Shown here: positions 1 to 63,921 of the stretch, piece after piece
Position numbering within the stretch: position 1 is the first letter of the stretch
How the letters are laid out: the number at the start of each line of letters is the position of its first letter
Assembly (NCBI RefSeq): GCF_020745735.1
Contig: NC_083427.1
Coordinates: 3,813,438 to 3,877,437, forward strand
Direction: 5' to 3'
Length of the DNA stretch: 64,000 bases
Source of the DNA: Hemiscyllium ocellatum
Taxonomy: Eukaryota
The notes under the pieces: model-generated
Told to the model about the DNA's origin: nothing
The model's input: the letters and a program-made list of their open reading frames with translations, nothing else
Databases searched by the model: none
Program-made: the position numbers and the translations under genes

Positions 1-560
1 GCATGCTCCAGCCCACAATGAGGACCGGATGATTGACGGCGGGTTGCGACCAATAGGAGGAGGGTGGCCAGTGCTGGAGGACGGAGCGAATGCAGCTGGT
101 CCTCCAACCAATCGGAGCGAAGCGGGCGGGGCTACACCGGCCCTTGCGTCACCATCCCACCCCTCCGAAGGAGTCTCTGCGCAGGCGCCGCGTCGCCGCA
201 ACTGAAAGATGGCCGGGTTGGCGCGAGCTGCGGGCGTTGGCGAATGGATAGTGGCCGCAGGCGAGAAATAAAGCCAGTGTGAGCTAAGAGGTTTCATCGG
301 CGATCGGTGTCAGCCGTCAGACCTGGATGAGAAATCCCCCGGGCCCGCGTTTGCAGCTAACGGCAAAAAGGCCGCGGGCCTCAGGCGGTAACAGGTCTGG
401 GTTACCATCGCCATCTTTCTTGGGGGCGGTGTTTAGTGAGACGTGTGCGCGGCCGCCATATTTATAGGGGGCAAAGCTCTGGAGGGCGCATGCGTTAACC
501 TTCCTTTGTTGTGGGTCTGGATGGGGACTTGCACGTAGAAAACTCAAACCTTGAGAAAAG
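1..560 (+). promoter_or_regulatory. CpG-island promoter/first exon of ZNF gene A (promoter family copy P1)
   Basis: CpG-rich. CCAAT at 50 and 108, GC box ~124-131, GGAGGACG-N14-GGTCCTCC at 76-105, paired CGCCAT(C/A)TTT YY1-type motifs at 409 and 455, NRF1-like GCGCATGCG at 486. Homologous to P2-P6. Confidence 0.75.
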
Positions 561-2748: not shown

Positions 2749-3618
2749 ATGGAAGGAGAAAGCACTGTACAGAGTGGGGAGAGACCATACACGTGTTCCG
2801 TGTGTGGGCAAGGCTTCAGCCGAGCATCTGGCTTGTCAGAACACAAATGGAGTCACAACGGAGGAAAGCCGTGGAAATGTGAGGACTGTGGGAAGGGATT
2901 CATTTCCCCGTCGAAGCTGGAAGCTCATCGGCGCACTCACACCGGGGAGAGGCCGTTCCCCTGCTCCGTCTGTGACAAGAGATTCGCCCTGCCCGCTGAC
3001 TTGCTGAGACACCAACGTGTTCACACCGACGAAAGACCTTTCCAGTGCCCGGACTGCACCAAGTGCTACAAAAGCTCCGGGGAGCTGATGCGCCACCAAC
3101 GCGTTCACACGGACGAGAGACCGTTCCGGTGCTCTCTGTGCGGCTCCGGGTTCCGGACCTCTCCGGACCTCACTGTCCACCAGCGCGTCCACACCGGGGA
3201 GAGGCCGTTCACGTGCTCCCTGTGCGGGAAGGGATTCACTCAGTCCTCCAGCCTGATGACACACTACCGCGTTCACACTGGGGAAAAGCCGTTCATCTGC
3301 TCCATGTGCGGGAAGGGCTTCACCTCCTCGTTCAACCTGCTGACGCACCAGCGGGTTCACACCGAGGAGTCCCCGTTCAGGTGCTCCCCCTGCGGGATTC
3401 GCTTCAAGCACTCCTCCCAACTCGCTGCACACCAGAGACTTCACAGCGGGGAGAGGCCGTTCACCTGCTCCAAGTGCGGGAAGGGGTTCACTCAGTCGTA
3501 CAACCTGCTGATCCACCAGCGGGTTCACACCGGGGAGAGGCCGTTCACCTGCGCCAAGTGTGGCAAGGGGTTCACGTGTTCGTCCCACCTGCTGAGGCAC
3601 CAGCGGGTTCACAAGTGA
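2749..3618 (+). CDS. C2H2 zinc-finger protein A (10 fingers, no KRAB/SCAN/BTB)
   Basis: ORF with 10 CxxC-x12-HxxxH fingers and HTGERPF linkers. ATG at 2749 in good context (accATGg). Pyrimidine tract plus AG acceptor at ~2659. Confidence 0.92.
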
Positions 3619-12611: not shown

Positions 12612-13619
12612 ATCCCTCTGGCCCCCAAACTCCAGCCATTGAACACTGCTTTGACCACTCATCCACCGAGAGGCTCCAGCCTGAACTGACATTCAGCAAT
12701 GACTGATTTGGGGACATTGCTTTCCTGTTCAAGCAGGATTGGATATGGCAGCAGGCATGAGTTGCGAATTTTATTGAGACAATATCAGGACAAGTTCATC
12801 TGGTGTCAAGCAAACTCTAGGCCGCAATCGACTCTTTCATACAGGTAGTATTCGTGTTGAGAAGTAGACCGTATAACACAAAGTATTCCTCGCAACTTTC
12901 ACAGCCTCGATCTTTGGTCTTTAAGCTTTTTCACTCTGTCTCGCTGGCTGTTAATCTTCGTGGCCCCTCTTTGCTGCATGCCATTTCCTGGGGGAGGCTC
13001 TCTTTTGTCCTAAGTTCTGATCTGAAGGGCTCTTGCCCGAAACGTTGATTCTCCTGCTCCTCGGATGTCGCCTGACCTGCTGTGCTCTTCCAGCAGCACA
13101 CCTTCGACCCTTAACCCTTCCCTCCACCTCGTCACAGCTTGTAGGCAATACTCACCTCACTGAATCAAGGGATCATCTGCGTACTCTTTGTTGTTCTATA
13201 TCTCCCTTGTCTCGAGGCTGCTATATCCTGTTGTTTATTTCACTGACATCTCTGCACCAGCAGCTTCAAGAGCTTGCTTTAGCTTTTTTTTAACTGCAGT
13301 AAACCAGGCCCTCTGTAACTTGGCTTCTTACTAATACATTGTACCCTATTCCCTAAGCTTTTTCCACTCTGTTATACTGTTAAGCTGAGTTTCACGTGAA
13401 GTTCTTAGGGGTAAAGGGATCAAAGGGTAACACGCCTGCCGACTACCCAAAGCCTGTCTCCCCACCCCCCACAATCTGCAAGGCTCTAGTCAAGAGTGTG
13501 GTGGAATGCTTCCCACTTGACAGGATGACTGCAGCTCCAATAACACTTAAGATACCTTCCCGGGTCTATTGGCACCATATTCACAAACATTCACTCTCAC
13601 CACCACTGACGCTCAGTAA

Positions 13620-15329: not shown

Positions 15330-17230
15330 GAATAGAGCTGTAGAGCATGAAAACAGACTCTTCAGTCCAACTCGTCCATCCCAACCTGATTTCCTAAATA
15401 AATCCAGTCCCATTTGCCAGTCTTTGTCCCATGAGGGTCCTGACCACAATGTCAACTCCTCTGTTCCTCGGACACTGCTGAGCTGCTGTGCTTTTTCCAG
15501 TGCCACACTTTATCATCTGCAGTCCTCACTGTCTTCTAGCATTTGGCCTATATCCTTCTAAACCCTTCCTATTAATATACCCATCCAGGTGCTTTTTAAA
15601 TGTTGTAATTGTACCAGCCTCCACCACTTCCTCCAGCAGCTTATTTCATACACGTGTCATCCTCTACGTGAAAACATTGGCCCCCAGGTCCCTTTGAAAT
15701 CTTTCCCCTCTCACCTTAAACCTATGCCCTCTAGTTCTGGATCTCCCCACGGGAAAAACTTTGTCTACTTATCCTATCAATGCTCCTCATGATTTTATAA
15801 ACCTCTATAAGATCACACTTCAGCTTCCGATGCTCCAGGGAAAATATCCCCAGTCTATTCAAGCTCTCCCTGTTGTTCAGACCTTCCAACCCTGGCAACA
15901 TCCTTGTAAATCTTTTCTGAACCCTTTCAAATTTCACAACACCCTTCCACTGGCAGGGAGACCAGAATTGGACACAGTATTCCAAACGTGGAGGAGCCAA
16001 TGTCTTGTACAGCTGCAACATGACCTCCCAATTCCTATATTCACTGACCAATACAGGTAAGCATATCAAGTGCCTTCTTCACTATCTTATCTACCTGTGA
16101 CTCCACTTTCAAAGAACTATGAACCTGCACTCCAAGGTCTCTTTGTTCAGCAACACTCTGCAGGGCCTTACCATTAAGTGTATAAGTCCTGCCCTCATTT
16201 GACTTTCCGAAATGCTGCATCTCATTTCCATCTGCCGCTCTACAGCCCATTGGCCCATGTGATCACGACCCTGTTATACTCTGAGGTAACCTTCACTGTC
16301 CACTGCACCTCCAGTTTTGGTGTCATCTGCAAACCTATGTTCACATCCAAGTCATTTACTCAAAGAACAAAAAGCAGTGGACCCAGCACCGATCCTTGTG
16401 GCACACTGCTGGCCACAGGCCTCCAGTCTGATGGCAACCCTTCACCACCACCACCCTCTGTCTTCTACCTTCAGCTCAGTTCTGTATCCAAATGGCTAGT
16501 TCTCCCCACATTCCATATGATCTAACCGCACTAACCAGTCTACCATGAAGAACCTTGTCAAACGCCTTACTGAAGTCCATCTAGATCATGTTCATCTCTC
16601 TTCCCTCATTAACCCTCTTCGTTACTTCAAAATCTCTATCAAGTTAGTGAGGCAAGATTTCCCACACACAAAGCCATGTTTACTATCTCTCATCGGGCCC
16701 TGCCTTTCCAAATAGATGTCCCTCAGGATTCCCTCCAACAACATGCCGACCACTGATGTCAGGGTCACTGGTCTTGAGTACCCTGGCTTTTCCTTACTAC
16801 CTTTCTTAAATAGTGGCACCACATTAGCTAATCTCCAGTCTTTCTGCACCTCAACCTATAGCTGTCAATGATACAAATATCTCAGCAAGGGGCGGTGCAA
16901 TCACTTCCCTAGCTTCCCCCAGAATTCTGAGGTATACCTAATCAGGTCTCGGCGATTCATCCACCTGTATGCATTTTAAGTATGCATTGTACTAGGGACA
17001 TTTTTCATGAGGTTGCTATTTATTTCCCCACATTCTCTATCTTCTATATCCTTCTCCACAGTAAACACTAATACAAAATACATGTTTAGTCTGTCCCCCA
17101 TCTTCTGCAGTTCCACACACAGGTGGCCTAGCTGATCTTTTAAGAGACCCTGTTCCTTCCCTGGTTCTCTCTGTCATAAATGTATTTGTAGGATCCCTTT
17201 GGATTCTCATTAACCTATTTTGCCAAAACT
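15330..17230 (-). mobile_element. CR1 LINE 3' portion (RT C-terminus and 3' end), decayed
   Basis: Minus translations LANVVPLFKKG..KPG, KHGFV.GKSCLTNL, LEYCVQFWSP, ERVQKRFTRMLPGL, DLIEVYKIM. Confidence 0.9.
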
Positions 17231-17439: not shown

Positions 17440-18270
17440 TCAGATAGGTAGAAATTGACCTGTGTGTGTGTGAGAGAGAGAACAACCATTAGGGAGACAA
17501 ATCAATGGATAATAGTATGGCAGGGAGAAAGAAAAGCTGACCATGGGGCCATAAGTCGGTGAAAATGGATTGGCTGAGCTGAAAGCACCCCATGTCATGA
17601 CAGGGTGTGGGAGTGGGTCAAGGACATGGAAGTTATTGTTCAAATTGTAAAAGCATAGAAACTGAAAGAACTGTGGATGCCGTAAATCCGAAACAAAACC
17701 AGAAATTGCTGAAAAGATAAGCAGGTCTGTGGAGGGAAATCAAGAGTTAACATTTCAGGTCATGTGACCCTTCCTCGGGATGGGGTTTGTGTGTGTGTGT
17801 GTGTATAAATATGTAAAATTATAGAAGACAATTATTGAGTCCTGAAGGGTCGCCAATTGGAAACTCAGATGCTGTTCCTCCAGCTTTTGCTGAGCCTTCC
17901 TGTAACAGGCCTGAAGCAGAAATGTTGACCAGAGAATAGGATGGTGCGTTGAAGTGGCAAGCAATTGGAAGCCTCAGGGAACTGCAGCTTTTCTTTCTGG
18001 CATTCTGCCCATCCATCCCTTTATCTCCCTAACTGTAGTTCTTCTCTCTTTGGTTCCATCTCTGGCTGTCCATCTGACTCCTCACTCGCTAACCCTGCCC
18101 CCTTGTCTTCAGCCTATGTATCACCTTTTCTTAGATACCATCAGTTCTGAAGAAGGGTCACTGGACTAGAAACATTGACTCTCCCTTCTCTGCACAGATG
18201 CTGCCAGAGTTTCTCCAGCCATTATGCTTTTGTTTCAGAGACCCAGCATCTTGCAGCTGCTTTGTTTTAT
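17440..18270. mobile_element. Penelope-like element relic with GIY-YIG tail and inverted pseudo-LTRs
   Basis: Minus frames LPIACHFNAPSYSLVNISASGLLQ and QKLEEQHLSFQLATLQ (PLE endonuclease C-terminus). Hammerhead-like motifs at ~17745-17780 (-) and 18143-18180 (+). Confidence 0.7.
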
Positions 18271-18307
18271 GAATGAATCCAGCTGAAGATCTACCAGAAG
18301 GGGAAAG

Positions 18308-18842
18308 GGGGCGGGGCTGGAGGACCGTGTGGGAAGCGGCTGGTCCTCAAACCAATGGGGGTGAATGAGGGGCGGGGCTGGAGGACCGTGTGGGAAGCGG
18401 CTGGTCCTCAAACCAATGGGGGTGAATGAGGGGCGGGGCTGGAGGACCGTGTGGGAAGCGGCTGGTCCTCAAACCAATGGGGGTGAATGAGGGGCGGGGC
18501 TGGAGGACCGTGTGGGAAGCGGCTGGTCCTCAAACCAATGGGGGTGAATGAGGGGCGGGGCTGGAGGACCGTGTGGGAAGCGGCTGGTCCTCAAACCAAT
18601 GGGGGTGAATGAGGGGCGGGGCTGGAGGACCGTGTTGTGCGCGGCTGGTCCTCCAACCGTTGGGCGTCAAGAAGGGGCGGGGTTGGAGCGCGAGCCGCTG
18701 TCAAAACAGCGGAAGCGAATGGGGGGGGGCAGGGCTGGAGGACCGGACGGCCGTAACTGGTCCTCCAGCCAATGGGGTGGGGGCAGGGCTGGAGGACCGG
18801 ACGGCCGTAACTGGTCCTCCAGCCAATGGGGTGGGGGCAGGG
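18308..18842 (+). repeat. Tandem array of promoter core module (5 identical 61-bp units, 1 variant, then 2+ units of 54 bp)
   Basis: Unit GGGGCGGGGCTGGAGGACCGTGTGGGAAGCGGCTGGTCCTCAAACCAATGGGGGTGAATGA starts at 18308, 18369, 18430, 18491, 18552, 18613. Confidence 0.95.
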
Positions 18843-19290
18843 CGAGTGAAGGCCAGCACCGCGTGGAGGCACGTGCTCAACCCCTCCCGCGCAGTCGCAG
18901 TTCCAATGTGATTGAAGTCTTGACGATGGGCTGGCGTTGCTGAGGAGATGGTAAGGTGGGGGCTGAGACCGCGAAGAGCGGCAGGAAAATGGAGCTCATG
19001 GGGACTGGGTGGTGTCGTAAACATCCGGTATAGGTCTCCGGACGCGAGTTAGAAACTCTCAGTGTCTTTATTCCTCTCAAGGGAGGAAGCGGCTGCAGGC
19101 CTCAGGTGGTGACAGGCCTAGATACCGCCGCCATCTTTATTGGGACAGTGTTGCCCCTTGCGACCGCCATGTTTATGGGGGGCAAAGGGCAATGGGGCGA
19201 ATGCACCTCCCTCCTTTGCCAGGGGATGGATAGGGGGAGTATTCACACAGAACAAACTCGAAGCTAAAGAAATGTTGGCTTCTTCTGAAT
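18843..19290 (+). promoter_or_regulatory. First exon/YY1 arm of promoter P2 (ZNF gene B)
   Basis: Candidate donor ATG|GTAAGG at 18951, GGCCTCAGGTGGTGACAGG at ~19098, paired CGCCAT(C/G)TTTA at ~19129 and ~19166. Confidence 0.7.
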
Positions 19291-20573: not shown

Positions 20574-21812
20574 ATGGAAGAAAAAAGCAGCGTTCCCACT
20601 GGGGAGAAACCGTACATGTGTTCCGTGTGTGAACGAGGCTTCAGCCGACCATCTGACCTGTCGCGGCACAAGTGTGGTCAGACTGGCATCAAATGGTGGA
20701 AATGTGGGAACTGCGGGAAAGGATTTGATTACCCATCCCAGCTGAAAAGGCACCAGCGCAGTCACAACGGGGAGAAGCCGTGGAAATGCACAGACTGTGG
20801 GAAGGGATTCAATTACCCGTCCGAGCTGGAGATTCACTGGCGTACTCACACTGGAGAGAAACTGTTTACCTGCTCCCAGTGTGGGAAACGATTGGCTCAC
20901 TTACACAGTCTGCTGATACACCAGCGCGTTCACACTGGGGAGAGACCGTTCAGCTGCTCTGAGTGTGGGAAGGGATTCACTACCTCATCCCACCTGTTGA
21001 CACACCAGCGGGTTCACACTGGGGAGACACCTTTTAAATGCCCGGATTGTGATAAGTGCTATAAAAGTTCCGGGGAACTGATGTCCCATCAACGTGTTCA
21101 CACTGATGAGAGACCATTCAAGTGCTCCCACTGTGGGACAGGGTTCAAGCACTCGTCTCAACGCACTGTACACCAGCGAATTCACACCGGGGAGAGGCCG
21201 TTCACCTGCTCTGAGTGTGGGAAGGGATTCACTCAGTCATCTGACCTGTTGAAACACCAGCGGGTTCACACCGATGAGAAACCTTTTAAGTGTCCAGACT
21301 GTGGGAAGTGTTTTAAAAGTCCTGGGGACCTGATGTCCCATCAACGTGTTCACACTGATGAGAGACCGTTCAAGTGCTCTCAGTGTGGGACTGGGTTCAG
21401 GCGGTCATCTGACCTTATCGTACACCAGCGGGTTCACACTGGAGAGAGGCCGTTTACCTGCTCCGAGTGTGGGAAAGGATTCGCTCAGTCATCCCACCTG
21501 CTGATACACCAGCGAGTTCACACTGACAAAAGGCCTTTTCAGTGTCCAGAGTGCAGCAAGTGCTTTAAAAGTTCTGGGGAACTGATGACCCATCAACGTG
21601 TTCACACTGACAACAGACCTTTTAAATGCCCAGACTGTGGGAAATGCTTTAAAAGTTCTGGGGAACTGATGTCCCATCAACGTATCCACACTGACGAGAG
21701 ACCGTTCAGGTGCTCTCACTGTGCGACTGGGTTCAGACGATCATCTGACCTCCACGAACACCAGCGGGTTCACACTGGGGAAATGACTGTTCACCTGCTC
21801 TGTATGAAGTGA
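20574..21812 (+). CDS. C2H2 zinc-finger protein B (14 fingers, first degenerate; frameshifted 15th)
   Basis: 412-aa ORF. Acceptor TTGCAG at ~20466, AATAAA at 21950-21955. Confidence 0.92.
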
Positions 21813-25317: not shown

Positions 25318-26193
25318 TCACTTGTGAACTCGCCGGTGCCTCAGGAGCTTGGATGACTGAGAGAAGCCTTTTCCACACTTGGAGCAGGTAAACAGTGGTT
25401 CCACTCTGTGAATTCGCTGGTGTGCAGTGAGGTGAGAGGATCGCTTGAACCCAGTCCCGCAGTGAGAGCACCTGAACGGTCTTTCGTCAGTGTGAACAAG
25501 TTGATGGGACATCAATTCCCCAGAACTTTTATAACATTTCCTGCAGTCTGGGCATTGGAAAGGTCTCTCCCCAGTGTGAACTCTTTTGTGCGTCATCAGG
25601 GCAGATGACTGAGTGAATCCCTTCCCACACTTGGGACAAGTGAACAATTTTTCCCTAGTGTGAGTTCTTTGGTGTCTCCGTAAACTGTAGAATTGGGTAA
25701 ATCGCTTACCACACTCGGGGCAGGTGAATGGTTTCTCCTTTGTGTGAGTACTTTGGTGTTTCTGCAAGCTGGATAAATGACTGAAACCCTCCTCACACTC
25801 AGAGCAGGTGAATGGTTTCTCCCCAGTATGAGTTCTCTGGTGTGCATGTAATGTGGATAAATAAGCAAAACCTTTCTCACACTCAGAGCAGGTGAACGGT
25901 TTCTCCCCCGTGTGAGTTCTCTGGTGCGTACGTAACGTGGATAGCTGAGCAAATTTCTTCCTACATTGATGGCAGGTGAATGGTTTCTCCCCAGTGTGAG
26001 TTCTCTGATGTTTTTGCAAGGTGGATAAATGAGCGAATCCCTTCCCACAGTCATTGCAGGTGAATGGCCTTTCCCCAGTGTGTCGACGCCGATGGCTTTC
26101 CAGCATAGATGGGAATCTGAATCCTTTCCCACAATCCGTGCATTTCCATGATTTATCCATGGGTGGCGTGTCACTGCAGGTTGAACGATCCAT
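25318..26193 (-). CDS. C2H2 zinc-finger protein C (10 fingers)
   Basis: Intact ORF. First ATG at 26193, alternative ATG at 26160 (MDKSWKC). Acceptor CTCTCACAG at ~26413. Confidence 0.9.
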
Positions 26194-26619
26194 CAAAGCT
26201 TCCTGCGAATCTTTCTCCCTGCTGTCTGTGGGACTGCAACAAAGCTCTTCCTGCTGTCAGTTCACAGGGATACTCCAGCTCACGCGTGTCGTTGCTTTTC
26301 CAGTCAAACTGATGTTTGGAATCCTTTCCCCTCAGGTGGCAGTCAGACAATCAGAGGTGAATGATAGTCGGGTCCTGTCGAATTGAGAGATTCAGTCAGA
26401 TCTTTTAATTCCCTGTGAGAGGAAGTTGACAAGGTTAAGGACAGAGAATCCTACTTTCTATTGTACAATTTGTTCTTTCTTAGCTCCCCAAAGCAGTAAA
26501 CTCCCTGTCCCTTCTTCCCACTCCCAGTTTTCCCATCCCTCTCCCTCTCCCCAGGTTGGCTCCATTTCTTCAGGGACTCACAAGAAAATCAATAGGGTCA
26601 ATCATTTCTGCTTCCGGTC

Positions 26620-31407: not shown

Positions 31408-32229
31408 TTACTTGTGAATTCGCTTGTGTCTGAGTAGGTGGGATGACTGAGTGAATCCCTTCCCACACTCGGAGCAAGTGAACGGTCTCTCCCCGGTGTG
31501 AACTCGCTGGTGTACAGAGAGTTGAGAGGATTGTCTGAACGCGAACCCACAGTGAGAGCACTTGAAAGGTCTCTCGTCAGTGTGAATACGTTGGTGGGAC
31601 ATCAGTTCCCGAGAACTTTTGTAGCACTTCTCACACTCCTGGCATCGGAACGCTCTCTCGTCACTGTGAACCTGTCGGTGTGTGAGGAGGTGGGATGACC
31701 GAGTGAATCCCTTCCCACAGTCAGCACAAGCGAATGGCCTTTCCCCAGTGTGAGTGCGCTGGTGGACGCTAAATTCAGACGATCGCTTGAACCGAGTCCC
31801 ACAGTGAGAGCATCTGAACGGCCTCTCCTCAGTGTGAACAAGTTGATGGGACATTAGGTCCCCGGGACTCTTGCAGCACTTCCCACAGTCCGGACATTTA
31901 AAAGGCCTCTCGTCAGTGTGAACCCGCTGGTGATTCAGTAGGTTAGATGAATTGTTGAACCCCTTCCCGCACTCAGAGCAGGTGAACGGTCTCTCCCCGG
32001 TATGAATGCGCCGATGCCTTTCCAGTTCGGATGGGGATCGGAATCCCTTCCCACAGTCTCCACATTCCCACCGTTTATCCCCGGTGTGACACCGCCTGTG
32101 CCTTGACAGGTCACAGGACCGGCTGAAATGTCGCTCACATACAGAACATGTGTATGGTTTCTCCATACCGAGAATGGTGCTTTTTCCTTCCGTGTTCAGA
32201 GTCCGAATGATGTGGGATCCCGACGTCAT
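31408..32229 (-). CDS. C2H2 zinc-finger protein D (9 fingers); start codon uncertain
   Basis: Intact ORF. ATGs at 32229 and 32166; the position homologous to the paralogue ATG is ACG (32193). Acceptor region homologous to genes A and E. Confidence 0.88.
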
Positions 32230-34449
32230 GCCGTTTCCACTTGCCCGACTGAAAATCTTCCCTTTCAAACAACCTATTTAATACAGTTGATTCAGAAAAA
32301 AAGGGGAGTGAGAAAGCCCACAAAAACACAGGCAGTTTGTGAAACTGAGCTGAATGAAGCTGGCGACGCGAGGGGCTGGCAAGGGGAAAAAGCGACTACA
32401 TAAACTGTCGATTGTCACAAACACCCAGCAGTTTCCTGAAAGTTCATCCCAGTATTGGGAACACTGAAGCCACTGCTTTGAATCCCTGCTATCAACGCCA
32501 CTCCGTCACCACCAAACCGATCCCAATCCCTGCCAACTGACCAGGCTGTTCACAAACTAGATAAAACATGTCATCCCAAGAGGAGCTTTGAACCACACAT
32601 TCCCATCACCACCAAGACCCCGATTTCCACCTCAATAACATTACCCAACACCACCCCAGTCTCAGCTCATCTGCTGCTGAAACTCTCGTCCATTCCTTTG
32701 TTATGTCCTGATTTAACCAGCCCAGTACATTCCTGACCACCCTCCCATATTCAAACTCCCTGAAATCTTGGAGGTCACCCAAGACTCTGTTGCCTGTGTG
32801 CTTACTCCCACTAAGTGTTGGTCGTTCATGTGTGCTCACTGACCGACACATTCTCCTGGCTAAGCAGCGCCAAACATTCCATATCCTTATCCTGATATTC
32901 AAATCCCTTGATGGCCTCTCCCTACTTCTATATTCTCCTCAGGCTTCACAACTCTCCAAGGTAGATCCGGTCTCATGGGTATCCCTGACCTTCATTGCTC
33001 CACATTCGGTGCTCTCCTTTCAGTTTCGGAAATCCTGAGGTTCTGGAATGTCTTCCCTAATCCTGTCCACCTCACATGCTCCTCCAAGGTTATCCTTCAA
33101 ACTGACCTTTCTCAACAACCTTCTGAGTCTCCTTCCCAAATGGCTCCTTCTGTGTACGGCTCCGCAATGTTGTTTTATGACATTTCCATAAAATGCGAAC
33201 ATTTTTAAAAGAATACAGGTTGCAAATACAAAAATGTATAGTGCTGCTCCTTCATCATTGATGGGTGAATAACCTGTAACTCCTTACCTTGCTGTGGGAG
33301 CACCTTCATCATATGGACTGCAGTAATTCAGGAAGGTCAAACATCATCATCATCTCCACTGGCAATGGGAGATTGACAAATATTGGCTCATTGCTGTGGA
33401 GAGAGAGAAAAACACAGTTGATGTTTCAGGATGTGCAAAATGAATCATCAGAACTAAAAACAGTGCAGAATTTGATGGTTAATATAAGCTCAGAAGTGGA
33501 CCATAGGGCAGGAAAAACGATTTCTTGCCGTGAGAAGATAAAGCTGTCAATGCAACAGCACAACTGTCAGGGATGGTCAGCTGTGAAACCTCTTTGAGAC
33601 ATCAGTTCGGCAAAGTAAAAGCTAAACACCAAAGCTGACTAAAATCGTTCTTACTGACACAGGGAAGTTAGACAATGGCAGCGAGGTAATCAAGGAGCAC
33701 AGAGGTGAAACCAAGCAATGGTTGGACATGGATTCTGATCCACAATAATGCAACCACAACAGTCTCAGAGCCACGAACCTCTCACAGGTAACAGAGAACA
33801 ACAGGAGAGCTCAAAATTGCAAGACATGCTAAAATCCCAAGAATAACATTTCACAATATATCCATACAAGATTAAACTAAAAACATCTCTTTAGAAACTC
33901 TTCTACTAACAACATCCCATTACATTTGAAGAACAACACACGCTTATTAACCTGATCTCAAGACTTGATCTTGTTTGATGATTTCACAGTGGAAATTGCT
34001 GGCTCTGACTGGATTGCAAAGTCCTCAAAAATGCAGTAACTTCAGCCCATTTACTACAAAGCTGCACTTATTAGCTCCCTCTGTGTTTAATATTTTGGTT
34101 CTCGAACCAAGACCTGTCATAAAATCAGAGCAAAAATGAAATGATAAGACCAAACGCTGTAAGGATTCAGCAGTTCAGGGATTTTCTGTGGAGGGAGAAG
34201 AGGAGTTAGTATTTTAGGCTGTGCAGAATGAACTACAGGAAACAAAAACGGTGCAGAATTTGGTGGACAGTGTAAGCTCCGAAGCAGAAGTGGAAATTGG
34301 ACAATAATCCACAAACAACTCCAGGCTGTGAAAGATAAGCAGGGAAAATAAAACTGGTCAGTCTGCCACATATAATCAATTGTCAGAATTTCATTTTTAC
34401 ATAAATCAGCAAAAGGAACAGCAGAATACTAAACACGGTTAAAATACGC

Positions 34450-37044: not shown

Positions 37045-37535
37045 CAATGGGCAGCAAGCTCCGCCCATTCATTCCAAACACTGCCCCCTACAAAGATGGC
37101 GGACACTCGTGGCCCAGTGACCCTAACAAAGATGGCTGCCGTTCCCTGGGGCCTGTCACTGCGAGCAAGCCGCGACACATCGTCCATTTTGTTGCCGACG
37201 TGGGGGACCGGGCGAGGATCCTATTCAGGCTTTGAGGCTGAACATAAAGTACGTTCGAAGCCTCTCCCACGCTTCCACTATTCATTTCATCGCTCCCTCC
37301 GATTCTCACCGTTTGTTGAGGTCTGAGATACGACGGACGGACCATCGATGGCCGGGGCGGGGGGAAATGGAACGATGTCAACCACGCATGCGCCTTACCA
37401 ATCGGGTCGTTCGGCATGTTTTAAATCACAATGGAAACGTCATCTGATTGACGGCTGGTCCGGACCAATAAATAACAGGGGGCGGACCTGGAGGACCGAA
37501 CTGGAGAGGCTGGTCCTCCAAACAATGGGAATGGA
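37045..37535 (-). promoter_or_regulatory. CpG-island promoter P4, likely driving gene D
   Basis: Minus-oriented paired YY1 motifs (CAAAGATGGC at 37091 and 37127), donor ACG|GTGAGA at ~37310 (-), NRF1-like CGCATGCGC at 37385, core with GGAGGACC-N14-GGTCCTCC at ~37490-37519. Confidence 0.75.
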
Positions 37536-38167
37536 TCCTCATTGAGAGTGGGATTCGAGCTGAACTCCAGGAGAAACCTGGGCCTTTTGGGTTTGTGGAT
37601 TTGGACCCTGTGCGATTATAGCAAACATTGCAATGTTCGTTACTGAAACGGATTTACTCAGGACACAACAGCAATTACCTTAGGGATTCACAAAGTGCAG
37701 TGGGAAAGGACATTCAGTGACAGGCTTAGGGGGCTGGGGGCGAGTTGAGTTATCAGCCCAGAGGCCACAAAGTGAGATAGGGAGACGACAGAGAGAACTA
37801 TGAGGGGCAGTCTCGGAAAAGGAGTAAGCTTTAAGAGAGAGTTTGTCCCGGTGGGCCAGAGGAAAAGATGGAAGCAACTGTTTGGATTGCCTCAATCTTA
37901 GTGACAAAGAAGCTATATGACCTCATTCCTCTTGCTAATAATGAGAATGGAGGAGGGACAGCACTTCAAACAGGACCCAATGTTAATCAAAGGTATTAAA
38001 AGTGATTTAACACAGCAAGAATTTAAAGCTAAGTTACTTTATTTGACCTTTATCCACAATATTAACCCCTTTTAATGCTGTGGGGTTCACTAACATTAAC
38101 AATATATGGACCCAAGACACACAACACAGGCTTGGATGCAACTAACAGCAAAATCCAATGACTGAAG

Positions 38168-39535
38168 TTAGTTATGAATTTTCTGATGTTTCTGCAATGC
38201 AGATGATCGAGTGAATCCCTTCCCACAATCTGAGCAGGTGAATGGCCTCTCCCCAGTGTGAACCCGCTGGTGTCTCAACAGACTGCATAATTGAGTGAAC
38301 GTCATACCACACTCGGAGCAAGTGTAAGGCCTTTCCCCAGTGTGAACCCGCCGGTGAATCACCAGCGTAGACGACCGACTGAATCCCTTTCCACACTCAG
38401 TGCAGATGAACGGCTTCTCGCCAGTGTGAATACTCCGATGTTTCGTCAGGCTGGCTAATTCAGTGAAGCCCCTCCCACACTCAGAGCACATGAACGGCCT
38501 CTCCCCAGTGTGAATCCGCTGGTGTATTACCAGCGTCGATGAGGAAGTGAAATCCTTCCCACACTCTGCACAGGTGAACGGCCTCTCCCCAGTGTGAACT
38601 CGCTGGTGTACCGTAAGGTCAGATGATCGTTTAAACCCAGTCCCACAGTGAGAGCACCTGAATGGTCTCTCGTCAGTGTGAACAAGCTGGTGGGACATCA
38701 GTTCCCCAGAACTTTTATAGCACTTCCCACAGTCTGGGCACTGAAATGGTCTCTCATCAGTATGAAGCCGCTGGTGTATCAACAGCTTGGATGACTGGGC
38801 GAATCCCTTCCCACACAATGAGCAGATGAATGGTCTCTCCCCGGTGTGAAGTCTTTGGTGTGCCAGCAGGGTGGATGACTGAGCGAATCTCTTCCCACAG
38901 TCAGAGCAGGTGAACGGTCTCTCCCCAGTGTGAACCCGCTGGTGTCTCAGGAGGTGGGAGGACTGGGCAAATCCCTTCCCACACTGGGAGCAGGTGAATG
39001 GTTTCTGGCCAGTGTGTACTCGCTGGTGCCTCAGCAAGTGGGAGGTGCGCGTGAATCCCTTCCCACACTCTGAGCAGCTGAACGGCCTCTCCCCAGTGTG
39101 AACTAACTCGTGTGCGGTGAGGTCAGATGACGATTTGAAGCCAGCCCCACAGTGAGAACACCCAAACGGTCTCTCATTGGTGTGAACACTTTGGTGGAAA
39201 ATCAGGTCCCAAGAACTAGTGAAGCACTTGCTGCAGACTGGACACTTAAATGGTCCCTCGTCAGTGTGAGTGCATTGGTGTGTCTGCAAGGTGGAAGAGG
39301 AAGTGAATCCCTTTCCACACTTTGAACAGATCAACAGCCCCTCTCCAACGTGACTGCGCCGATGTGTTTCCAACTCAGACTGGGATCGGAATCCAATCTC
39401 ACAATCCCTACATTGCTTCTCACCACTGTAACTGCATTTATGTTCAAACAGGTCAGACGATCGACTGAAGCCTTGGTCACACACAGAACACATGTACAGT
39501 TTCTCTTCATTGTCAACAGTCCTTTTGTCGTCCAT
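38168..39535 (-). CDS. C2H2 zinc-finger protein E (16 fingers, first degenerate)
   Basis: 455-aa intact ORF. Acceptor CACAG at ~39644, AATAAA on minus at 38038-38043. Confidence 0.92.
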
Positions 39536-50227: not shown

Positions 50228-51119
50228 CATTCCCTGATGACAATCTCACATCTTTTCCCAATGTCACTGCAAGGCATTTCCATCCAAACAATGATCCAAC
50301 GCGCTCTTCAATACTTCAACTGAACCTGCCTTCACATTTCCAGGCAATACATTCCACATCCTAATGAGTATTGTGTGAAAATGTTCTCTCTCACAACCCC
50401 CTTGAATCTTTTGCACATCGGATTTGTTTTTCTTTTCCAAAATGGCAAAAACCTTCCTCCCATCGATAGTTTCCATTCATGATTTTGAAAAACTCAGATC
50501 TCCTCTTAGTCCCCTTCACTCCAGAGAGGACAGGTCCACTTCGTCAATCTATCCAAACAACTAAAGTTTCTCATTGCCGGAATCACCCTTGCAAATTATT
50601 TCACCATCCAATACAAAGAAATCACAGCTTCATGGGCAGCAACCTCCTCCAAGTCAATCCAAATAATATCTTTTAACAAACATGGCAGCTGTGAATGTGC
50701 ACAAACGATGTGCCACTCCTTCCTGACACTCTGCTCCTTCCCACCTACCCCTTCCCTCTCTGCCCTCCACTCCCCTCTTGCCCCCACCACCCTCTTTGCC
50801 CTCTCCACAATTCTTCTCGCAACACCCATTCCCTCCCAATGTCCAACCCCATTCCCCACAACGTCACAGCCCCTCACAATAACCCCCAATGTTGTAGCGG
50901 CCTCAACCCCCCCCAACCTCGCACCCCCTCCCCATTCATCCCGTCACCCCCTATCCTGCCACTCCCCCAACACTGCATCGTCTCATCGCATCCCCCCCCC
51001 AAAACCGTACACCCAAACCCACCCACATCGCACCCCAACCCCCTTCATGCCTTATCCCCCCAACCCCACCCTGCAACCACCCTCCACGCCGTGTACCCCC
51101 CCAATTTCCCCCACATTGC

Positions 51120-51610
51120 AGCCCCAACCCTCCTCCACACCGTATCCCCCCCAAACTCCCCCCACATTGCACCCCCAACCCTCCTCCACACCGTATCCCC
51201 CCAAATCACACCCCCAACCCTCCTCCACACCGTATCCCCCCAAATCACACCCCCAACCCTCCTCCACACCGTATCCCCCCAAATCGCACCCCCAACCCTC
51301 CTCCACACCGTATCCCCCCAAATCGCACCCCCAACCCTCCTCCACACCGTATCCCCCCAAATCGCACCCCCAACCCTCCTCCACACCGTATCCCCCCAAA
51401 TCGCACCCCCAACCCTCCTCCACACCGTATCCCCCCAAATCGCACCCCCAACCCTCCTCCACACCGTATCCCCCCAAATCACACCCCCAACCCTCCTCCA
51501 CACCGTATCCCCCAACACCGTATCCCCTCTCCCCCTACACAGTATCCCCTCTCTCCCCCCCCCCACCCCCACCACCACCACCACCACCACCACCACCACC
51601 ACCACCACCA
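51120..51610. repeat. 39-bp C-rich minisatellite (~10 copies) followed by (CAC)n
   Basis: Unit ACCCCCAACCCTCCTCCACACCGTATCCCCCCAAATC(A/G)C; (ACC)n at ~51571-51610. Confidence 0.95.
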
Positions 51611-51639: not shown

Positions 51640-52210
51640 GGCCCCAAAACTGACCCCGGGCTCCTCTCCCGCGACCGTTGGGAGCCGACGTTCCGTCCGA
51701 TCGCCGGCGGCGCGAGGAAAATGGCGGCTTGCGCGTGCGCCTGACAAACCACCGGCCGCCTCCGGGACGCACTGCGCATACGCTCTCGCTGGCGGCGAAT
51801 GATCGACCGTCCAGTCCGGCCAGTAGCCAGCACGGGGGCGGGGCTGGAGGACCGCAGGGGACCGGTCCTCCAACCAATCGGAGTGAAGTGGGGGCGGGTC
51901 TACCGTGCGCGACGTCTGGCCGCTTGCCAGAACTAACGCGACTGTAAAAGTGCAATAATAATGGAGAGGGGAAACGAAAGGACGCTCGTTTCGGTTGGAA
52001 GATTTCATAAACATCCGGTGTACTTTCCCATGTCTGAATTAGAAACGACCAGTGCCGTGTTTGAGGCAAAGAGGAAGAAAAACGGGCTGCGGGCCTCAGG
52101 TGGTGACAGGCCCGTTTGCCGCCGCCATATTTGTTAGGGGCGAGATTTGGCGACACACGGCCGCAGGCGCCATCTTTGTCGGGGGCGAGTTGCAGCAGGG
52201 TGTCCTTCAT
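51640..52210. promoter_or_regulatory. CpG-island promoter P5, probably bidirectional
   Basis: Core GC box-GGAGGACC-N10-GGTCCTCC-CCAAT-GC box at 51834-51898. Plus YY1 pair at ~52123 and 52168. Minus YY1 site AAAATGGCGG at 51718 and minus donor GG|GTCAGT at ~51654. Confidence 0.75.
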
Positions 52211-52828: not shown

Positions 52829-53162
<334 letters not shown>

Positions 53163-53279
53163 TTGGATTTTGATATTAATTACATCCAGTAATGATGTAT
53201 GCTCTTGGTCCACCTCTGCTGATGTTAGTAAACTCCACCCCTTGTATGAGGGCCAGTAAATGTCAAATATGGATTTGTA

Positions 53280-59819: not shown

Positions 59820-60450
59820 GCTTGATGGGCAGCAAGCTCCTCCCAGTCAATGCAACACGTTGCTATTGACAAATACGGCGGCTCTATGAGTGCATTAAGG
59901 TCGAGCTTTTCCTCCCTTTATCCCATCTTAAGCTCCAACTCATTTTCCTACCACCCTCCCTGTCCCCTCTGCCTCCATTGAACAGGACAAGCTCCTTCAA
60001 CCAATCGGGGTGGGGCTAACGTCCAGCCACGTGATGCCCGCGCATGCGCGTTACTGCGGCGACCGCGGTCTGGCCGAACGCCGCTGCTGCTGCAGGCGAC
60101 GGTAAAGAGGGAGTTCGAGCAGACAACGAAATGAAGACAGTGTGGACTAAGAACTTGCGTAAATGTCCGCTGTAGGTCCCCCCCCCGGAATAGAGTTAGC
60201 AAACTCCCTGCCCCGCGTTTGCGGTAAACGACTCCGGGCCGAAGGCGGTGACAGGCTCCGGTTGCCGCGGCCATCTTTGTCAGGGGCACCTGCCGCGGGC
60301 TGTATTTGTAGACGCCATCTTTGTAGGGGGCGAGCTGTGGCAGAGCGCATGCTCTGCTGTCCTTCACTGACAGAGCAGTGGAGTGTTTACATACAGCAAA
60401 CTCAAAACCAAGAGAAATCTTGGTCTGTTCTCGATTTCTGTTGTGTACTG
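59820..60450 (+). promoter_or_regulatory. CpG-island promoter/first exon P6 of gene F
   Basis: CCAATC-GGGGTGGGGC at 60001, CGCATGCGCG at 60041, candidate donor ACG|GTAAAG at ~60102, GGCGGTGACAGG, YY1 pair at ~60270 and 60313. Confidence 0.75.
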
Positions 60451-61650: not shown

Positions 61651-63126
61651 CTTTTTACAAAAAAAGTGTTGCGTTCAGCACAGCCAACACATTTTCTCAC
61701 TCTTAGCTTTTGTTATCTCTTATTCAATTCTTCATCTGACCTGGCCTGCTATCAATTAATCAATTATCTTCTTCCTTGTTTTCTCTCTCTCTCTCTCTCT
61801 CTCTCTGTGCTCTGTCTCCACCTATCTGCTCACTCCCACCCCAATCCCATCACCGAACCTCTTCAACTAATGCAACCACCAGTCTTTCCCACTGCTGACA
61901 GTTAGGGTGAAGAATCACTGGACTCAAAATGTTAACGCGGCTTCCTTTCCACAGACCCGGCCAGACCTGCTGAGGCTTCTCAGCAATTTCTGTTTTTGCT
62001 TGTGTTCTCCAGCATCAGCAGTTCTCTGATTTATTTGACCAATCGATTTCTCCCAACCTTTCATCCCTGAAGTGAATATCTGTCCCGAACATGAAAGGTG
62101 GAACTGAGAACCTGCACCCATTGCAGATGGCACCTCCTTAATGTCAGCTGGCTGCAACAGGACTACTGTTAGCATCTGATGTCCACCCTCAAGTTGTGAG
62201 GATGTCAGCCTGCCTTGGTGTAGACCTGCATGTGGTGTCTCGATCTACAGTTCCTCAATCCTAGGGGATTGCAGAGGAGAGTCTCTTAGTGCAGCACAGA
62301 GACATCGATAAACTCATTCCTGCATTCAACAAGTGCAGACTCTCCCAGCATTACCTGTGAATTACAACTGAGATCGAGCAGGATTTAGTTTGTGTACAAA
62401 ATGTACGTTTGTAAGAATATTCCCCCCTCCCCCCAACCACTATTGAGAGGACGGTTCTGTCTTAGATTGAAGCAACAACCGTCCAGACTGCTGCCAGTTT
62501 CTTACCGTAAGACTTCATTATTCTTGAGCTCAAACTTGCATAAAATGAATGATAACAGGTTGGCTAGCTTTTGAATTGTTCCCAAAATATACGTGCTGTG
62601 TTCCTTGCAACCGCGTAATCGTACCTTTGTGACAGACAACTGTCCTTTGCACTGATGTGTTTTTGTCTGTGTCCTAATTTCATCACCTATTCGCAGTAAA
62701 TGCAGCCGTTTATAAAAGTCCCTCTCCTTCACCCTGACCTCTACCACCACCACCACCACTACCACTTCCTTTGTTCCCAGTGCTTCTACTGAAGCCTGGG
62801 TCTTGTGCCAGCCCACAACGGGTTGGCAGCTTTGCTTTGCTGTGCTGGTGGGCACATAGTGACGTGAGTGGTGCTGAAGACATCCTAGCAGCAGCGCTTG
62901 TGGTCTGTTCCGTTCTATGGCATTAACCCCACAGATTGACTCCGCTCCAATGCACCTTTTGTGCCTGGCAGTTTTGTGGTTGTGGATACTGTCTCATCTC
63001 AGTTTCTTTTTCCCCTGTTTAAGCGATTTGCGCAGGAGTTGCAGCCAGATACAGTGCGAAGGCCAGATCAGGATCTGACCCCATCCGTCCGGCCTTTGGT
63101 AACCTGAATGTCGCTGGGTTTTGAAC

Positions 63127-63921
63127 ATGGACGGACAAAGCCCCACTCGCAGTGGGGAGCGATTGTACATGTGTCCGGTGTGCAGGCGAGGCTTCAGACA
63201 GTCGTCTGCTCTGTCGAGGCACAAGCGCAGTCACGGCGTGCAGAAACCGTGGAAGTGCGGGGACTGTGGGAAGGGATTCATTTCCCCGTCAAAGCTGGAG
63301 ACTCATCGGCGGACTCACACCGGGGAGAAGCCCTTCACCTGCCCCGAGTGTGAAAAGGGATTTGCGGACTCCTCGGCTCTCCTGAGGCACCGGCGCACCC
63401 ACACCGGGGAGCGGACGTTCACCTGCTCCGACTGTGGGGAGGGGTTCACCCGCTCGTCCACCCTGCTGGCTCACCATCGGGTTCACACTGGGGAGAGACC
63501 GTTCACCTGCTCCATGTGCGGGAAGGGGTTCACTCAGCTGTCCAACCTGCTGACCCACCAGCGGGTGCACACCGGAGAGAAGCCGTTCGCCTGCGCCGAG
63601 TGCGGGAAGGGATTCGCCGATTCATCCGCCCTGCTGAGGCACAAGCGAGTCCACACCGGGGAGAGGCCGTTCACCTGCTCCGAGTGCGGGAAGGGCTTCA
63701 TTCAGTCGTACAACCTGCAAATACACCAGCGCACGCACACCGGGGAGAGACCGTTCACCTGCACGGTGTGTGGGAAAGGATTTACTGACTCGTCCAGCCT
63801 GCTGACACACCAGCGGGTGCACACCGGGGAGAGGCCGTTCACCTGCTCCGAGTGCGGGAAGAGATTCACCCGTTCGTCCAACCTGCTGACCCACAAGCGG
63901 GTTCACGGTCACCCGCAGTGA
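63127..63921 (+). CDS. C2H2 zinc-finger protein F (9 fingers)
   Basis: Intact ORF, ATG at 63127 (aacATGg), acceptor TTGCGCAG at ~63035. Confidence 0.92.

What the first reader, a model, noticed from the sequence alone, without database searches (positions are those of the whole stretch)
73..112. Conserved GGAGGACC...GGTCCTCC inverted repeat with a freely diverging spacer, sitting between a GC box and CCAAT
Seen at 76-105, in eight copies within 18308-18830, at 37490-37519 and at 51846-51871. The arms are almost invariant and extend to a 12-bp GGCTGGAGGACC/GGTCCTCCAGCC in the 54-bp units. The spacers are largely unrelated and 10-15 bp long (GAGCGAATGCAGCT, GTGTGGGAAGCGGCT, GGACGGCCGTAACT, GAACTGGAGAGGCT, GCAGGGGACC). 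Conserved arms around a variable middle point to selection on the half-sites or on a hairpin/cruciform. I do not recognise this as a standard vertebrate promoter motif. Inference: it is a site for a dedicated, possibly autoregulatory ZNF factor controlling the family.
Basis: partly seen in the sequence, partly recalled or inferred. Interest (0 to 1): 0.7.

Follow-up and report, generated by a model that had tools for sequence, protein, structure and literature searches.

The report
Conserved palindrome in shark ZNF promoters
A short inverted repeat sits between a GC box and a CCAAT box in the promoters of some shark zinc-finger genes; it is real and kept far better than its surroundings, so it is most likely a pair of binding sites for an unidentified protein and not a DNA hairpin, which makes it a modest new promoter motif.

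Summary
CTGGAGGACC-N10-15-GGTCCTCC occurs only at four places in the window, all in the same orientation. Each lies between a GC box and a CCAAT box, upstream of the shared non-coding leader of fingers-only C2H2 zinc-finger genes of a shark.

- **Conservation.** Pairwise identity is 0.96-0.97 for the arms, against 0.52 for the spacers and 0.52-0.57 for the flanks. The rest of the promoter is near saturation. The arms are the longest invariant runs in about 560 aligned bases.
- **No sign of a hairpin.** There is no compensatory change. The two arm mutations are one-sided.
- **Copies without the repeat.** A fifth promoter of the family (about 60000) has lost the repeat.
- **Other species.** One copy in a sevengill shark (Heptranchias) keeps the right arm plus CCAAT block letter for letter (22 nt), but has a GT box where the left arm would be.

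My reading: two oppositely oriented protein-binding sites, with the right one fused to an NF-Y site being the old part.

Earlier notes of this scan describe shared ZNF promoter and leader cassettes elsewhere in this genome, but none names this palindrome.

The parts
74..83 (+). Promoter A, left arm CTGGAGGACg (one mismatch at the inner end)
84..97 (+). Promoter A, 14-nt spacer
98..112 (+). Promoter A, right arm GGTCCTCC, then AA, then CCAAT (108-112). The 22-24 nt block is identical to D and to Heptranchias L002.
30..54 (+). Promoter A, upstream degenerate unit: TGATTGACGG (30-39, 9 of 10 of the TALE DECA motif), 10 bp, then CCAAT (50-54). Decayed arms on both sides.
18308..18688 (+). Promoter B, 6.2 tandem units of 61 bp. 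Each is GC box, left arm, 15-nt spacer, right arm (GGTCCTCa in units 1-5), CCAAT. Unit 6 has a changed spacer and CCAAT mutated to CCGTT.
18714..18843 (+). Promoter B, 2.4 tandem units of 54 bp with perfect 12-bp arms GGCTGGAGGACC / GGTCCTCCAGCC and a 14-nt spacer
37488..37526 (+). Module C: left arm 37488-37497, spacer, right arm 37512-37519, CCAAT mutated to ACAAT. No leader follows, so it is an orphan promoter fragment. The upstream unit has TGATTGACGG at 37445-37454 and CCAAT at 37465-37469.
51844..51878 (+). Promoter D: left arm 51844-51853, 10-nt spacer, right arm 51864-51871, CCAAT 51874-51878. The leader follows, but the finger exon downstream is degenerate.
59990..60013 (+). Promoter E: same leader family, CCAAT block kept (60001-60005), but the left arm and spacer are missing and the right arm is reduced to TCCTTC. 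This copy has no inverted repeat. It lies 3.1 kb upstream of finger exon 63121-63918.
361..480 (+). Shared leader core in A. Homologues are at B about 19085-19200, D about 52080-52190 and E about 60225-60330. It holds the GGCCTCAGGYGGTRACAGG block and two YY1-like GCCATnTTT sites, and it marks which promoters belong to this family.

Best explanation
The repeat is a pair of oppositely oriented copies of one short cis-element (GGYTGGAGGACC and its complement GGTCCTCCARCC). It lies in the proximal promoter of one subfamily of fingers-only C2H2 zinc-finger genes of a shark (assembly GCA_020745735.1, named epaulette shark in earlier notes).

Selection acts on the letters of the arms, meaning recognition by a sequence-specific protein, and not on their ability to pair. 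The outer ends of the arms run into the GC box (Sp/KLF type) on the left and into the first two C of the CCAAT box (NF-Y type) on the right. A factor on the arms must therefore work next to, or in competition with, those two general activators.

The right arm fused to CCAAT is the old part, because it is letter-perfect in a sevengill shark. The left arm is either a later inverted copy or a less constrained second site.

Shown: the arms are conserved far above background, there is no covariation, and some copies have one arm only. Inferred: protein binding, a position upstream of the transcription start, and interplay with NF-Y and Sp/KLF. The factor is unidentified.
For: - The motif is far above chance and confined to four promoters in one orientation.
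- Arm identity is 0.96-0.97, against 0.52 for the spacer and 0.52-0.57 for the flanks.
- Other non-motif promoter positions are at 45-58% identity, so the copies are old and the spacer is simply neutral.
- The arms are the longest invariant runs in about 560 aligned bases.
- Recent gene conversion is unlikely, because a conversion tract would carry the spacer along.
- No pair changes on both sides. The mismatches in A and in the 61-bp B units are uncompensated.
- Heptranchias L002 13369-13394 (minus strand) has 22-24 nt identical to the right arm plus CCAAT block of A and D, plus homology to the upstream unit. It has GGGGTGGGCGG where the left arm would be, and it forms no hairpin (z +0.58).
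- A donor-like GTAA(A/G) lies 69-127 bp after the CCAAT in B, D and E. This fits a start site downstream of the module, which would leave the repeat untranscribed.
Against: - No binding data exist and I could name no matching factor.
- The sample is small: four independent loci in the window and one copy from another species.
- Two of the best-kept copies belong to an orphan fragment (C, with CCAAT mutated) and to a gene with a decayed finger exon (D). Promoter E, upstream of an open 266-codon finger ORF (63121-63918), has lost the repeat. Arm conservation therefore does not track the present state of the genes.
- The spacing between arms varies by 5 bp, half a helical turn, which a rigid dimer would not tolerate.
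Confidence: 0.5

Rival explanations
1. There is no separate factor. The arms are extended context of the NF-Y and Sp/KLF sites that they overlap, or were simply inherited with an unusually slow local rate, and the palindromic look is incidental.
For: - The arms abut and overlap the CCAAT and GC boxes.
- The deep conservation seen in Heptranchias covers the right arm only together with CCAAT, as one block.
- Promoter E works, or at least persists, without the repeat.
Against: - From general knowledge, NF-Y reads CCAAT plus a few flanking bases, which does not explain 8-10 invariant bases on its 5' side.
- The arms are better kept than the CCAAT block and the GC box themselves.
- The left arm is a perfect reverse complement of the right in three independent loci, which is hard to get by accident.
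Confidence: 0.2
2. One reading: the arms are the site of a dedicated zinc-finger protein encoded by the same gene family, which regulates its own family.
For: Only indirect. The element is restricted to promoters of this ZNF subfamily in the window. The paralogues share finger cassettes that could give a common specificity.
Against: - Nothing links any encoded protein to the arms.
- I made only a by-eye reading of the finger contact residues. It ran through no tool and does not count as evidence.
- The right arm plus CCAAT block predates the split between sevengill and carpet sharks, while such ZNF arrays turn over fast.
- The spacing of the half-sites varies by 5 bp.
Confidence: 0.1
3. It is a structural element: the repeat acts as a hairpin or cruciform in DNA, or as a hairpin in a 5' leader RNA if transcription starts further upstream.
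For: - As single-stranded DNA the copies fold at -9 to -16 kcal/mol, with z -2.4 to -5.3 for A, the 54-bp B unit, C and D.
- The arms extend to 12 bp in the 54-bp units.
- B shows two separate unit amplifications, as might be expected of slippage-prone DNA.
Against: - Zero pairs have changes on both sides, and all departures break pairing.
- The five identical 61-bp units fold no better than shuffles (z -0.44).
- E and Heptranchias lack a partner arm.
- From general knowledge, loops of 10-15 nt make cruciform extrusion costly.
- The sequence of the arms, not just their complementarity, is constant across old paralogues.
- No Rfam family reaches even a quarter of its gathering score.
Confidence: 0.08
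4. It is a transposon relic: the two arms are the terminal inverted repeats of a very small MITE or an excision footprint.
For: Short inverted repeats with an unrelated middle resemble MITE ends. The cluster is full of transposons, for example directly upstream of B at about 18100-18280.
Against: - Every copy has the same flanks (GC box, CCAAT, then the same leader), so the copies arose by gene duplication and not by insertion.
- No target-site duplication flanks the arms.
- An element of 26-38 bp is below the size of known MITEs, from general knowledge.
- No copy lies outside promoters in the 64 kb window or in about 100 kb of ray and shark loci.
Confidence: 0.03

Closest known systems
Proximal promoters built from Sp/KLF GC boxes and NF-Y CCAAT boxes, including composite NF-Y elements such as the MHC class II X-Y module, ERSE (CCAAT-N9-CCACG) and the TALE DECA plus CCAAT pairs of early embryos (PMC6023610)
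   Same: - GC box and CCAAT box lie about 30-40 bp apart, and the CCAAT flanks fit the usual RRCCAATSRG.
- A conserved partner sequence sits directly beside the CCAAT.
- Units repeat at about 54-67 bp.
- An upstream unit carries a 9-of-10 DECA motif 10 bp from a CCAAT.
   Different: The partner sequence GGTCCTCC matches none of the partners I know (X box, CCACG, E-box, DECA), and here it is duplicated in inverted orientation on the other side of a free spacer.
Family-specific promoter elements of clustered multigene families, such as the conserved sequence element of protocadherin alternative promoters or the subtype-specific elements of histone genes (from general knowledge)
   Same: A short block is kept almost invariant in the promoters of many diverged paralogues of one cluster, while the surrounding promoter drifts.
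   Different: - The binding factors of those elements are known (CTCF; HINFP, OCT1 and others), while here the factor is unknown.
- This element is a palindrome with a variable middle.
- It is not present in all family members (E lacks it).
HINFP (HiNF-P) site of histone H4 promoters, core GGTCCG (recalled from memory; a mouse H4 promoter primer containing GGTCCGC is printed in PMC3128520)
   Same: It shares the GGTCC core. The upstream unit of C even reads CTGGTCCGGACC.
   Different: The conserved arms read GGTCCT, not GGTCCG, and I could not retrieve the published consensus. This is a lead, not a match.
Shared promoter-leader cassettes of shark ZNF clusters noted earlier in this scan (s1-147075, s1-172547, s1-172519)
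   Same: Same genome and the same kind of genes: a shared non-coding 5' module with tiny leader exons, copied along clusters.
   Different: Those notes describe near-identical cassettes kept alike by copying. Here the paralogues are old (about 50% identity outside the motifs), and the point is a small footprint within them.

Membership tests
GC-box / CCAAT-box (Sp-KLF / NF-Y type) proximal promoter | A CCAAT pentamer with purine-rich 5' flank and S-R-G 3' flank, and a GGGGCGGGG-type box within a few tens of bp | tested here: met
   A, B and D carry AACCAATCGG, AGCCAATGGG or AACCAATGGG, and GGGGCGGGGC lies directly 5' of the left arm. C has the CCAAT mutated to ACAAT.
GC-box / CCAAT-box (Sp-KLF / NF-Y type) proximal promoter | Position about 40-120 bp upstream of a transcription start | tested here: inconclusive
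   The only evidence is a donor-like GTAA(A/G) 69-127 bp after the CCAAT in B, D and E, and the shared leader further on. No reads could be laid.
Hairpin or cruciform-forming inverted repeat under structural selection | Complementarity kept through compensatory changes across copies | tested here: not met
   0 of 12 pairs change on both sides, and all departures are one-sided or break the pair.
Hairpin or cruciform-forming inverted repeat under structural selection | Folding clearly better than shuffled sequence in all copies | tested here: inconclusive
   z is -2.4 to -5.3 in four versions, -0.44 in the 61-bp B units and +0.58 in Heptranchias.
MITE or terminal inverted repeats of a DNA transposon | Target-site duplication, and copies dispersed in unrelated flanks | tested here: not met
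   All copies share the same GC-box and CCAAT flanks, and A, B and D also share the leader. There is no duplication next to the arms and no copy outside promoters.
Known structured RNA family (Rfam) | A match at or above the family gathering score | tested here: not met
   The best match is 33 bits against a gathering score of 168, a plant miRNA model that matches both strands of the palindrome.
HINFP binding site | Core GGTCCG / CGGACC (from memory; consensus not retrieved) | tested here: not met
   The arms are GGTCCT / AGGACC in every copy. Only the decayed upstream unit of C has GGTCCG.
TALE DECA plus NF-Y composite (for the upstream unit only) | TGATTGACAG close to a CCAAT (average about 20 bp; PMC6023610) | tested here: met
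   TGATTGACGG (9 of 10) lies 10 bp before a CCAAT in A (30-39 and 50-54) and in C (37445-37454 and 37465-37469). It is degenerate in D and in Heptranchias. Occupancy was not tested.

The most novel reading that the evidence does not exclude
The two arms are read by one lineage-specific factor, possibly a product of the ZNF clusters themselves. By sitting on both arms it covers the ends of the GC box and the CCAAT box and so gates access of Sp/KLF and NF-Y. That would be a common on-off switch for a whole subfamily of shark zinc-finger genes, with the right arm plus CCAAT composite dating back to the origin of modern sharks.
Probability: 0.12. Interest if true: 0.65.

Novelty: new member of a known kind. 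Interest (0 to 1): 0.35.

Why it matters
Little is known about how the large, fast-evolving zinc-finger clusters of vertebrates are switched on, and nothing is known for cartilaginous fish. Here is a 9-12-bp element kept almost letter-perfect in promoters that are otherwise saturated with change, half of it shared with a shark lineage that split off more than 200 million years ago by usual estimates. It is a concrete handle: it can be used to pull down the factor, to find all promoters of this subfamily, and to ask whether the family is co-regulated. The finding remains a candidate cis-element of an ordinary kind. It is not a new mechanism.

Tried and rejected
- **RNA and read evidence.** Of the nine cartilaginous-fish proteins listed, eight were looked up and four gave DNA. 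Loci of Pristis, Amblyraja and Rhinoraja have no module, but they need not be the same subfamily. Cetorhinus, Mobula, Heterodontus and Mustelus gave no DNA.\n- **Metagenome scans.** Scans for the full module and for the 20-nt right arm plus CCAAT block found nothing.\n- **Literature.** Searching for the arm sequence returned only primers. The HINFP lead could not be checked, because the paper is not held.\n- **Factor matches by eye.** I compared the arms by eye with CTCF, NFI, nuclear-receptor, p53, CP2 and Y-box sites. None fits. This is from memory and is not a database test.\n- **Recognition code.** A by-eye reading of finger contact residues was too unreliable to use.\n- **Earlier notes.** None mentions the arm sequences.

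Full report
**What the window is.** The window is a cluster of C2H2 zinc-finger genes. Finger exons lie on the plus strand at 2749-3615 (A), 20574-21809 (B) and 63121-63918 (E), and on the minus strand at 25321-26196, 31411-32268 and 38171-39535. The proteins of A and B start a few residues before the first finger, so they consist of fingers only. Two of the proteins are on record for assembly GCA_020745735.1. Earlier notes of this scan call this genome a shark, the epaulette shark.

**Check of the observation.**
- The pattern GGAGGACC-N6-22-GGTCCTC gives 15 strand matches against none in 100 shuffles. The octamer alone occurs 16 times against 3.2 expected, always inside the same four loci.
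- Allowing one mismatch adds the left arm of A (CTGGAGGACg) and nothing else that is paired.
- The sites are A 74-105, eight units in B 18308-18843 (6.2 units of 61 bp and 2.4 units of 54 bp), C 37488-37519 and D 51844-51871. All are in the plus orientation.
- The spacer is not completely free. It always begins with G, and its last two bases are CT in five of the six versions (CC in D).

**Are the arms better kept than their surroundings?** Yes.
- Among six distinct versions, mean pairwise identity is 0.97 for the left arm and 0.96 for the right arm. It is 0.52 for the spacer, 0.52 for the 20 bp upstream (which includes the GC box) and 0.57 for the 30 bp downstream (which includes the CCAAT box).
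- A, B, D and a fifth promoter E (see below) can be aligned over about 560 bp of promoter and leader. Outside the recognisable motifs they are 45-58% identical, which is about saturation. The paralogues are therefore old and the spacer is simply neutral, not hypervariable.
- In the A-B-D alignment 28% of columns are invariant. The longest invariant run is the left arm (10 nt). The right arm (9 nt) ties with one leader block.
- Recent gene conversion cannot explain this, because a conversion tract would have carried the spacer along.

**Context.**
- A, B, D and E share a leader with a GGCCTCAGGYGGTRACAGG block and two YY1-like GCCATnTTT sites about 220-350 bp downstream of the CCAAT.
- A donor-like GTAA(A/G) lies 69-127 bp after the CCAAT in B, D and E. 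This fits earlier notes of tiny untranslated leader exons in this genome's ZNF genes, and it puts the repeat upstream of the likely start site. This is inference.
- Just upstream of the well-kept unit, A, C and D carry a second, decayed unit of the same build. Its middle is TGATTGACGG in A and C, which matches 9 of 10 bases of the TALE (Pbx-Prep) DECA motif, and it lies 10 bp before another CCAAT. DECA motifs next to NF-Y sites are a described pairing in early zebrafish embryos (PMC6023610).
- The promoter is therefore a short array of GC-box and CCAAT units, and B has amplified it further. This is in line with the CCAAT-box arrays that earlier notes report at other promoters of this shark.

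**Copies that lack the repeat.**
- Promoter E (about 59990-60013) has the leader and a good CCAAT block. However, the left arm and spacer are missing and the right arm is reduced to TCCTTC.
- The three minus-strand finger exons have neither the module nor this leader.
- C keeps perfect arms, but its CCAAT is mutated and no leader follows. D keeps perfect arms, but its finger exon is decayed.
- Arm conservation thus reflects long past constraint and does not map neatly onto which genes look intact today.

**Other species.**
I obtained one locus each from Pristis pectinata, Amblyraja radiata, Rhinoraja longicauda and Heptranchias perlo.
- The three ray loci show nothing, but they need not belong to the same subfamily.
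- The Heptranchias locus L002 has, on its minus strand at 13369-13394, 22-24 nt identical to the right arm plus CCAAT block of A and D, together with recognisable homology to the upstream unit.
- Where the left arm would be, Heptranchias has a GT box (GGGGTGGGCGG). The stretch forms no hairpin (z +0.58).
- The right arm fused to CCAAT is therefore ancient. It is shared by two shark lineages usually dated more than 200 million years apart. The inverted partner is either younger or dispensable.
- The Heptranchias module points away from the nearest downstream finger exon. A stretch like the 3' part of leader E lies at L002 15348-15413 on the other strand. This is unexplained.

**Hairpin or protein sites?**
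- With the 12-bp helix imposed on seven versions, no pair changes on both sides. Every departure is one-sided or breaks the pair.
- As single-stranded DNA, four versions fold better than shuffles (z -2.4 to -5.3). The five amplified 61-bp units do not (z -0.44).
- Loops of 10-15 nt make cruciform extrusion costly (general knowledge).
- Rfam gives nothing near threshold.
- What is constant across old paralogues is the sequence itself, not merely complementarity. This is the signature of a protein-binding site.
- The arms reach into the last bases of the GC box and the first two C of CCAAT. A factor on them would therefore act beside or against Sp/KLF and NF-Y. Whether it activates or represses cannot be told.
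- The arm-to-arm distance varies by 5 bp, which argues for two independently bound sites or a flexible dimer.

**Which factor?** Comparison from memory with common vertebrate motifs gave no fit. The GGTCC core recalls the HINFP site of histone H4 promoters (GGTCCG), but the arms read GGTCCT, and I could not retrieve the consensus. The age of the right arm plus CCAAT block, set against the fast turnover of such finger arrays, speaks mildly against it.

**A transposon origin is unlikely.** All copies share the same GC-box and CCAAT flanks, and A, B and D also share the leader. There is no target-site duplication, and no copy lies outside promoters.

**Verdict.** The reading that the half-sites are selected is supported. 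The identity of the factor is open. It is a new candidate cis-element of an ordinary kind (a family-specific promoter motif beside NF-Y), resting on few independent copies and on no expression or binding data. The scan had already noted shared ZNF promoter and leader cassettes elsewhere in this genome, but not this palindrome.

Noticed in passing
window 30-54; 37445-37469; degenerate at 51800-51809: TGATTGACGG, matching 9 of 10 bases of the TALE (Pbx-Prep) DECA motif, lies exactly 10 bp before a CCAAT box in the decayed upstream unit of promoters A and C. This pairing is described for early-embryo promoters in zebrafish (PMC6023610).
   Followed up: partly
window 377-395, 407-418, 452-463, and homologues near 19098-19185, 52092-52180, 60237-60320: The shared leader holds a near-invariant block GGCCTCAGGYGGTRACAGG (with a CAGGTG E-box in B and D) and two YY1-like GCCATnTTT sites about 45 bp apart. 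These are as well kept as the palindrome arms.
   Followed up: partly
window 18327-18341 and the four following 61-bp units: The spacer of the amplified 61-bp units contains TGTGGGAA, which fits the RBPJ/Su(H) consensus as I recall it. It is present in this promoter only.
   Followed up: no
window 18676-18713: Between the 61-bp and 54-bp arrays lies a decayed unit with a different perfect palindrome, CCGCTGT-CAAA-ACAGCGG, in place of the usual arms. Its CCAAT is reduced to GAATGG.
   Followed up: no
window 59990-60050: Promoter E has lost the left arm and spacer. Just downstream of its CCAAT it has a CACGTG E-box and a GCGCATGCGC (NRF1-type) palindrome.
   Followed up: partly
window 52900-53200 and 37530-38160: The finger exon behind promoter D is decayed: only about two finger units remain and there is no long ORF. 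Module C has no leader or gene behind it and points into the 3' end of the minus-strand gene 38171-39535.
   Followed up: partly
window 51074-51513 and 51718-51740: A C-rich 39-bp tandem array (about 9-10 copies, 93-98% alike) lies directly upstream of promoter D. Between it and the module are a YY1-like site on the minus strand and a GCGCACGCGC box, so this may be a divergent promoter.
   Followed up: no
L002 13369-13480 (minus) and 15348-15413 (plus): In Heptranchias the module points away from the nearest downstream finger exon (15878-16672, plus strand), while a stretch like the 3' part of leader E lies 2 kb away on the plus strand. This could be an inversion, bidirectional use, or an annotated gene model that joins two genes.
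   Followed up: no
window 18100-18280: A common cartilaginous-fish interspersed repeat abuts the first unit of the B array. B therefore seems to have lost the upstream DECA unit to an insertion.
   Followed up: no
   Followed up: no
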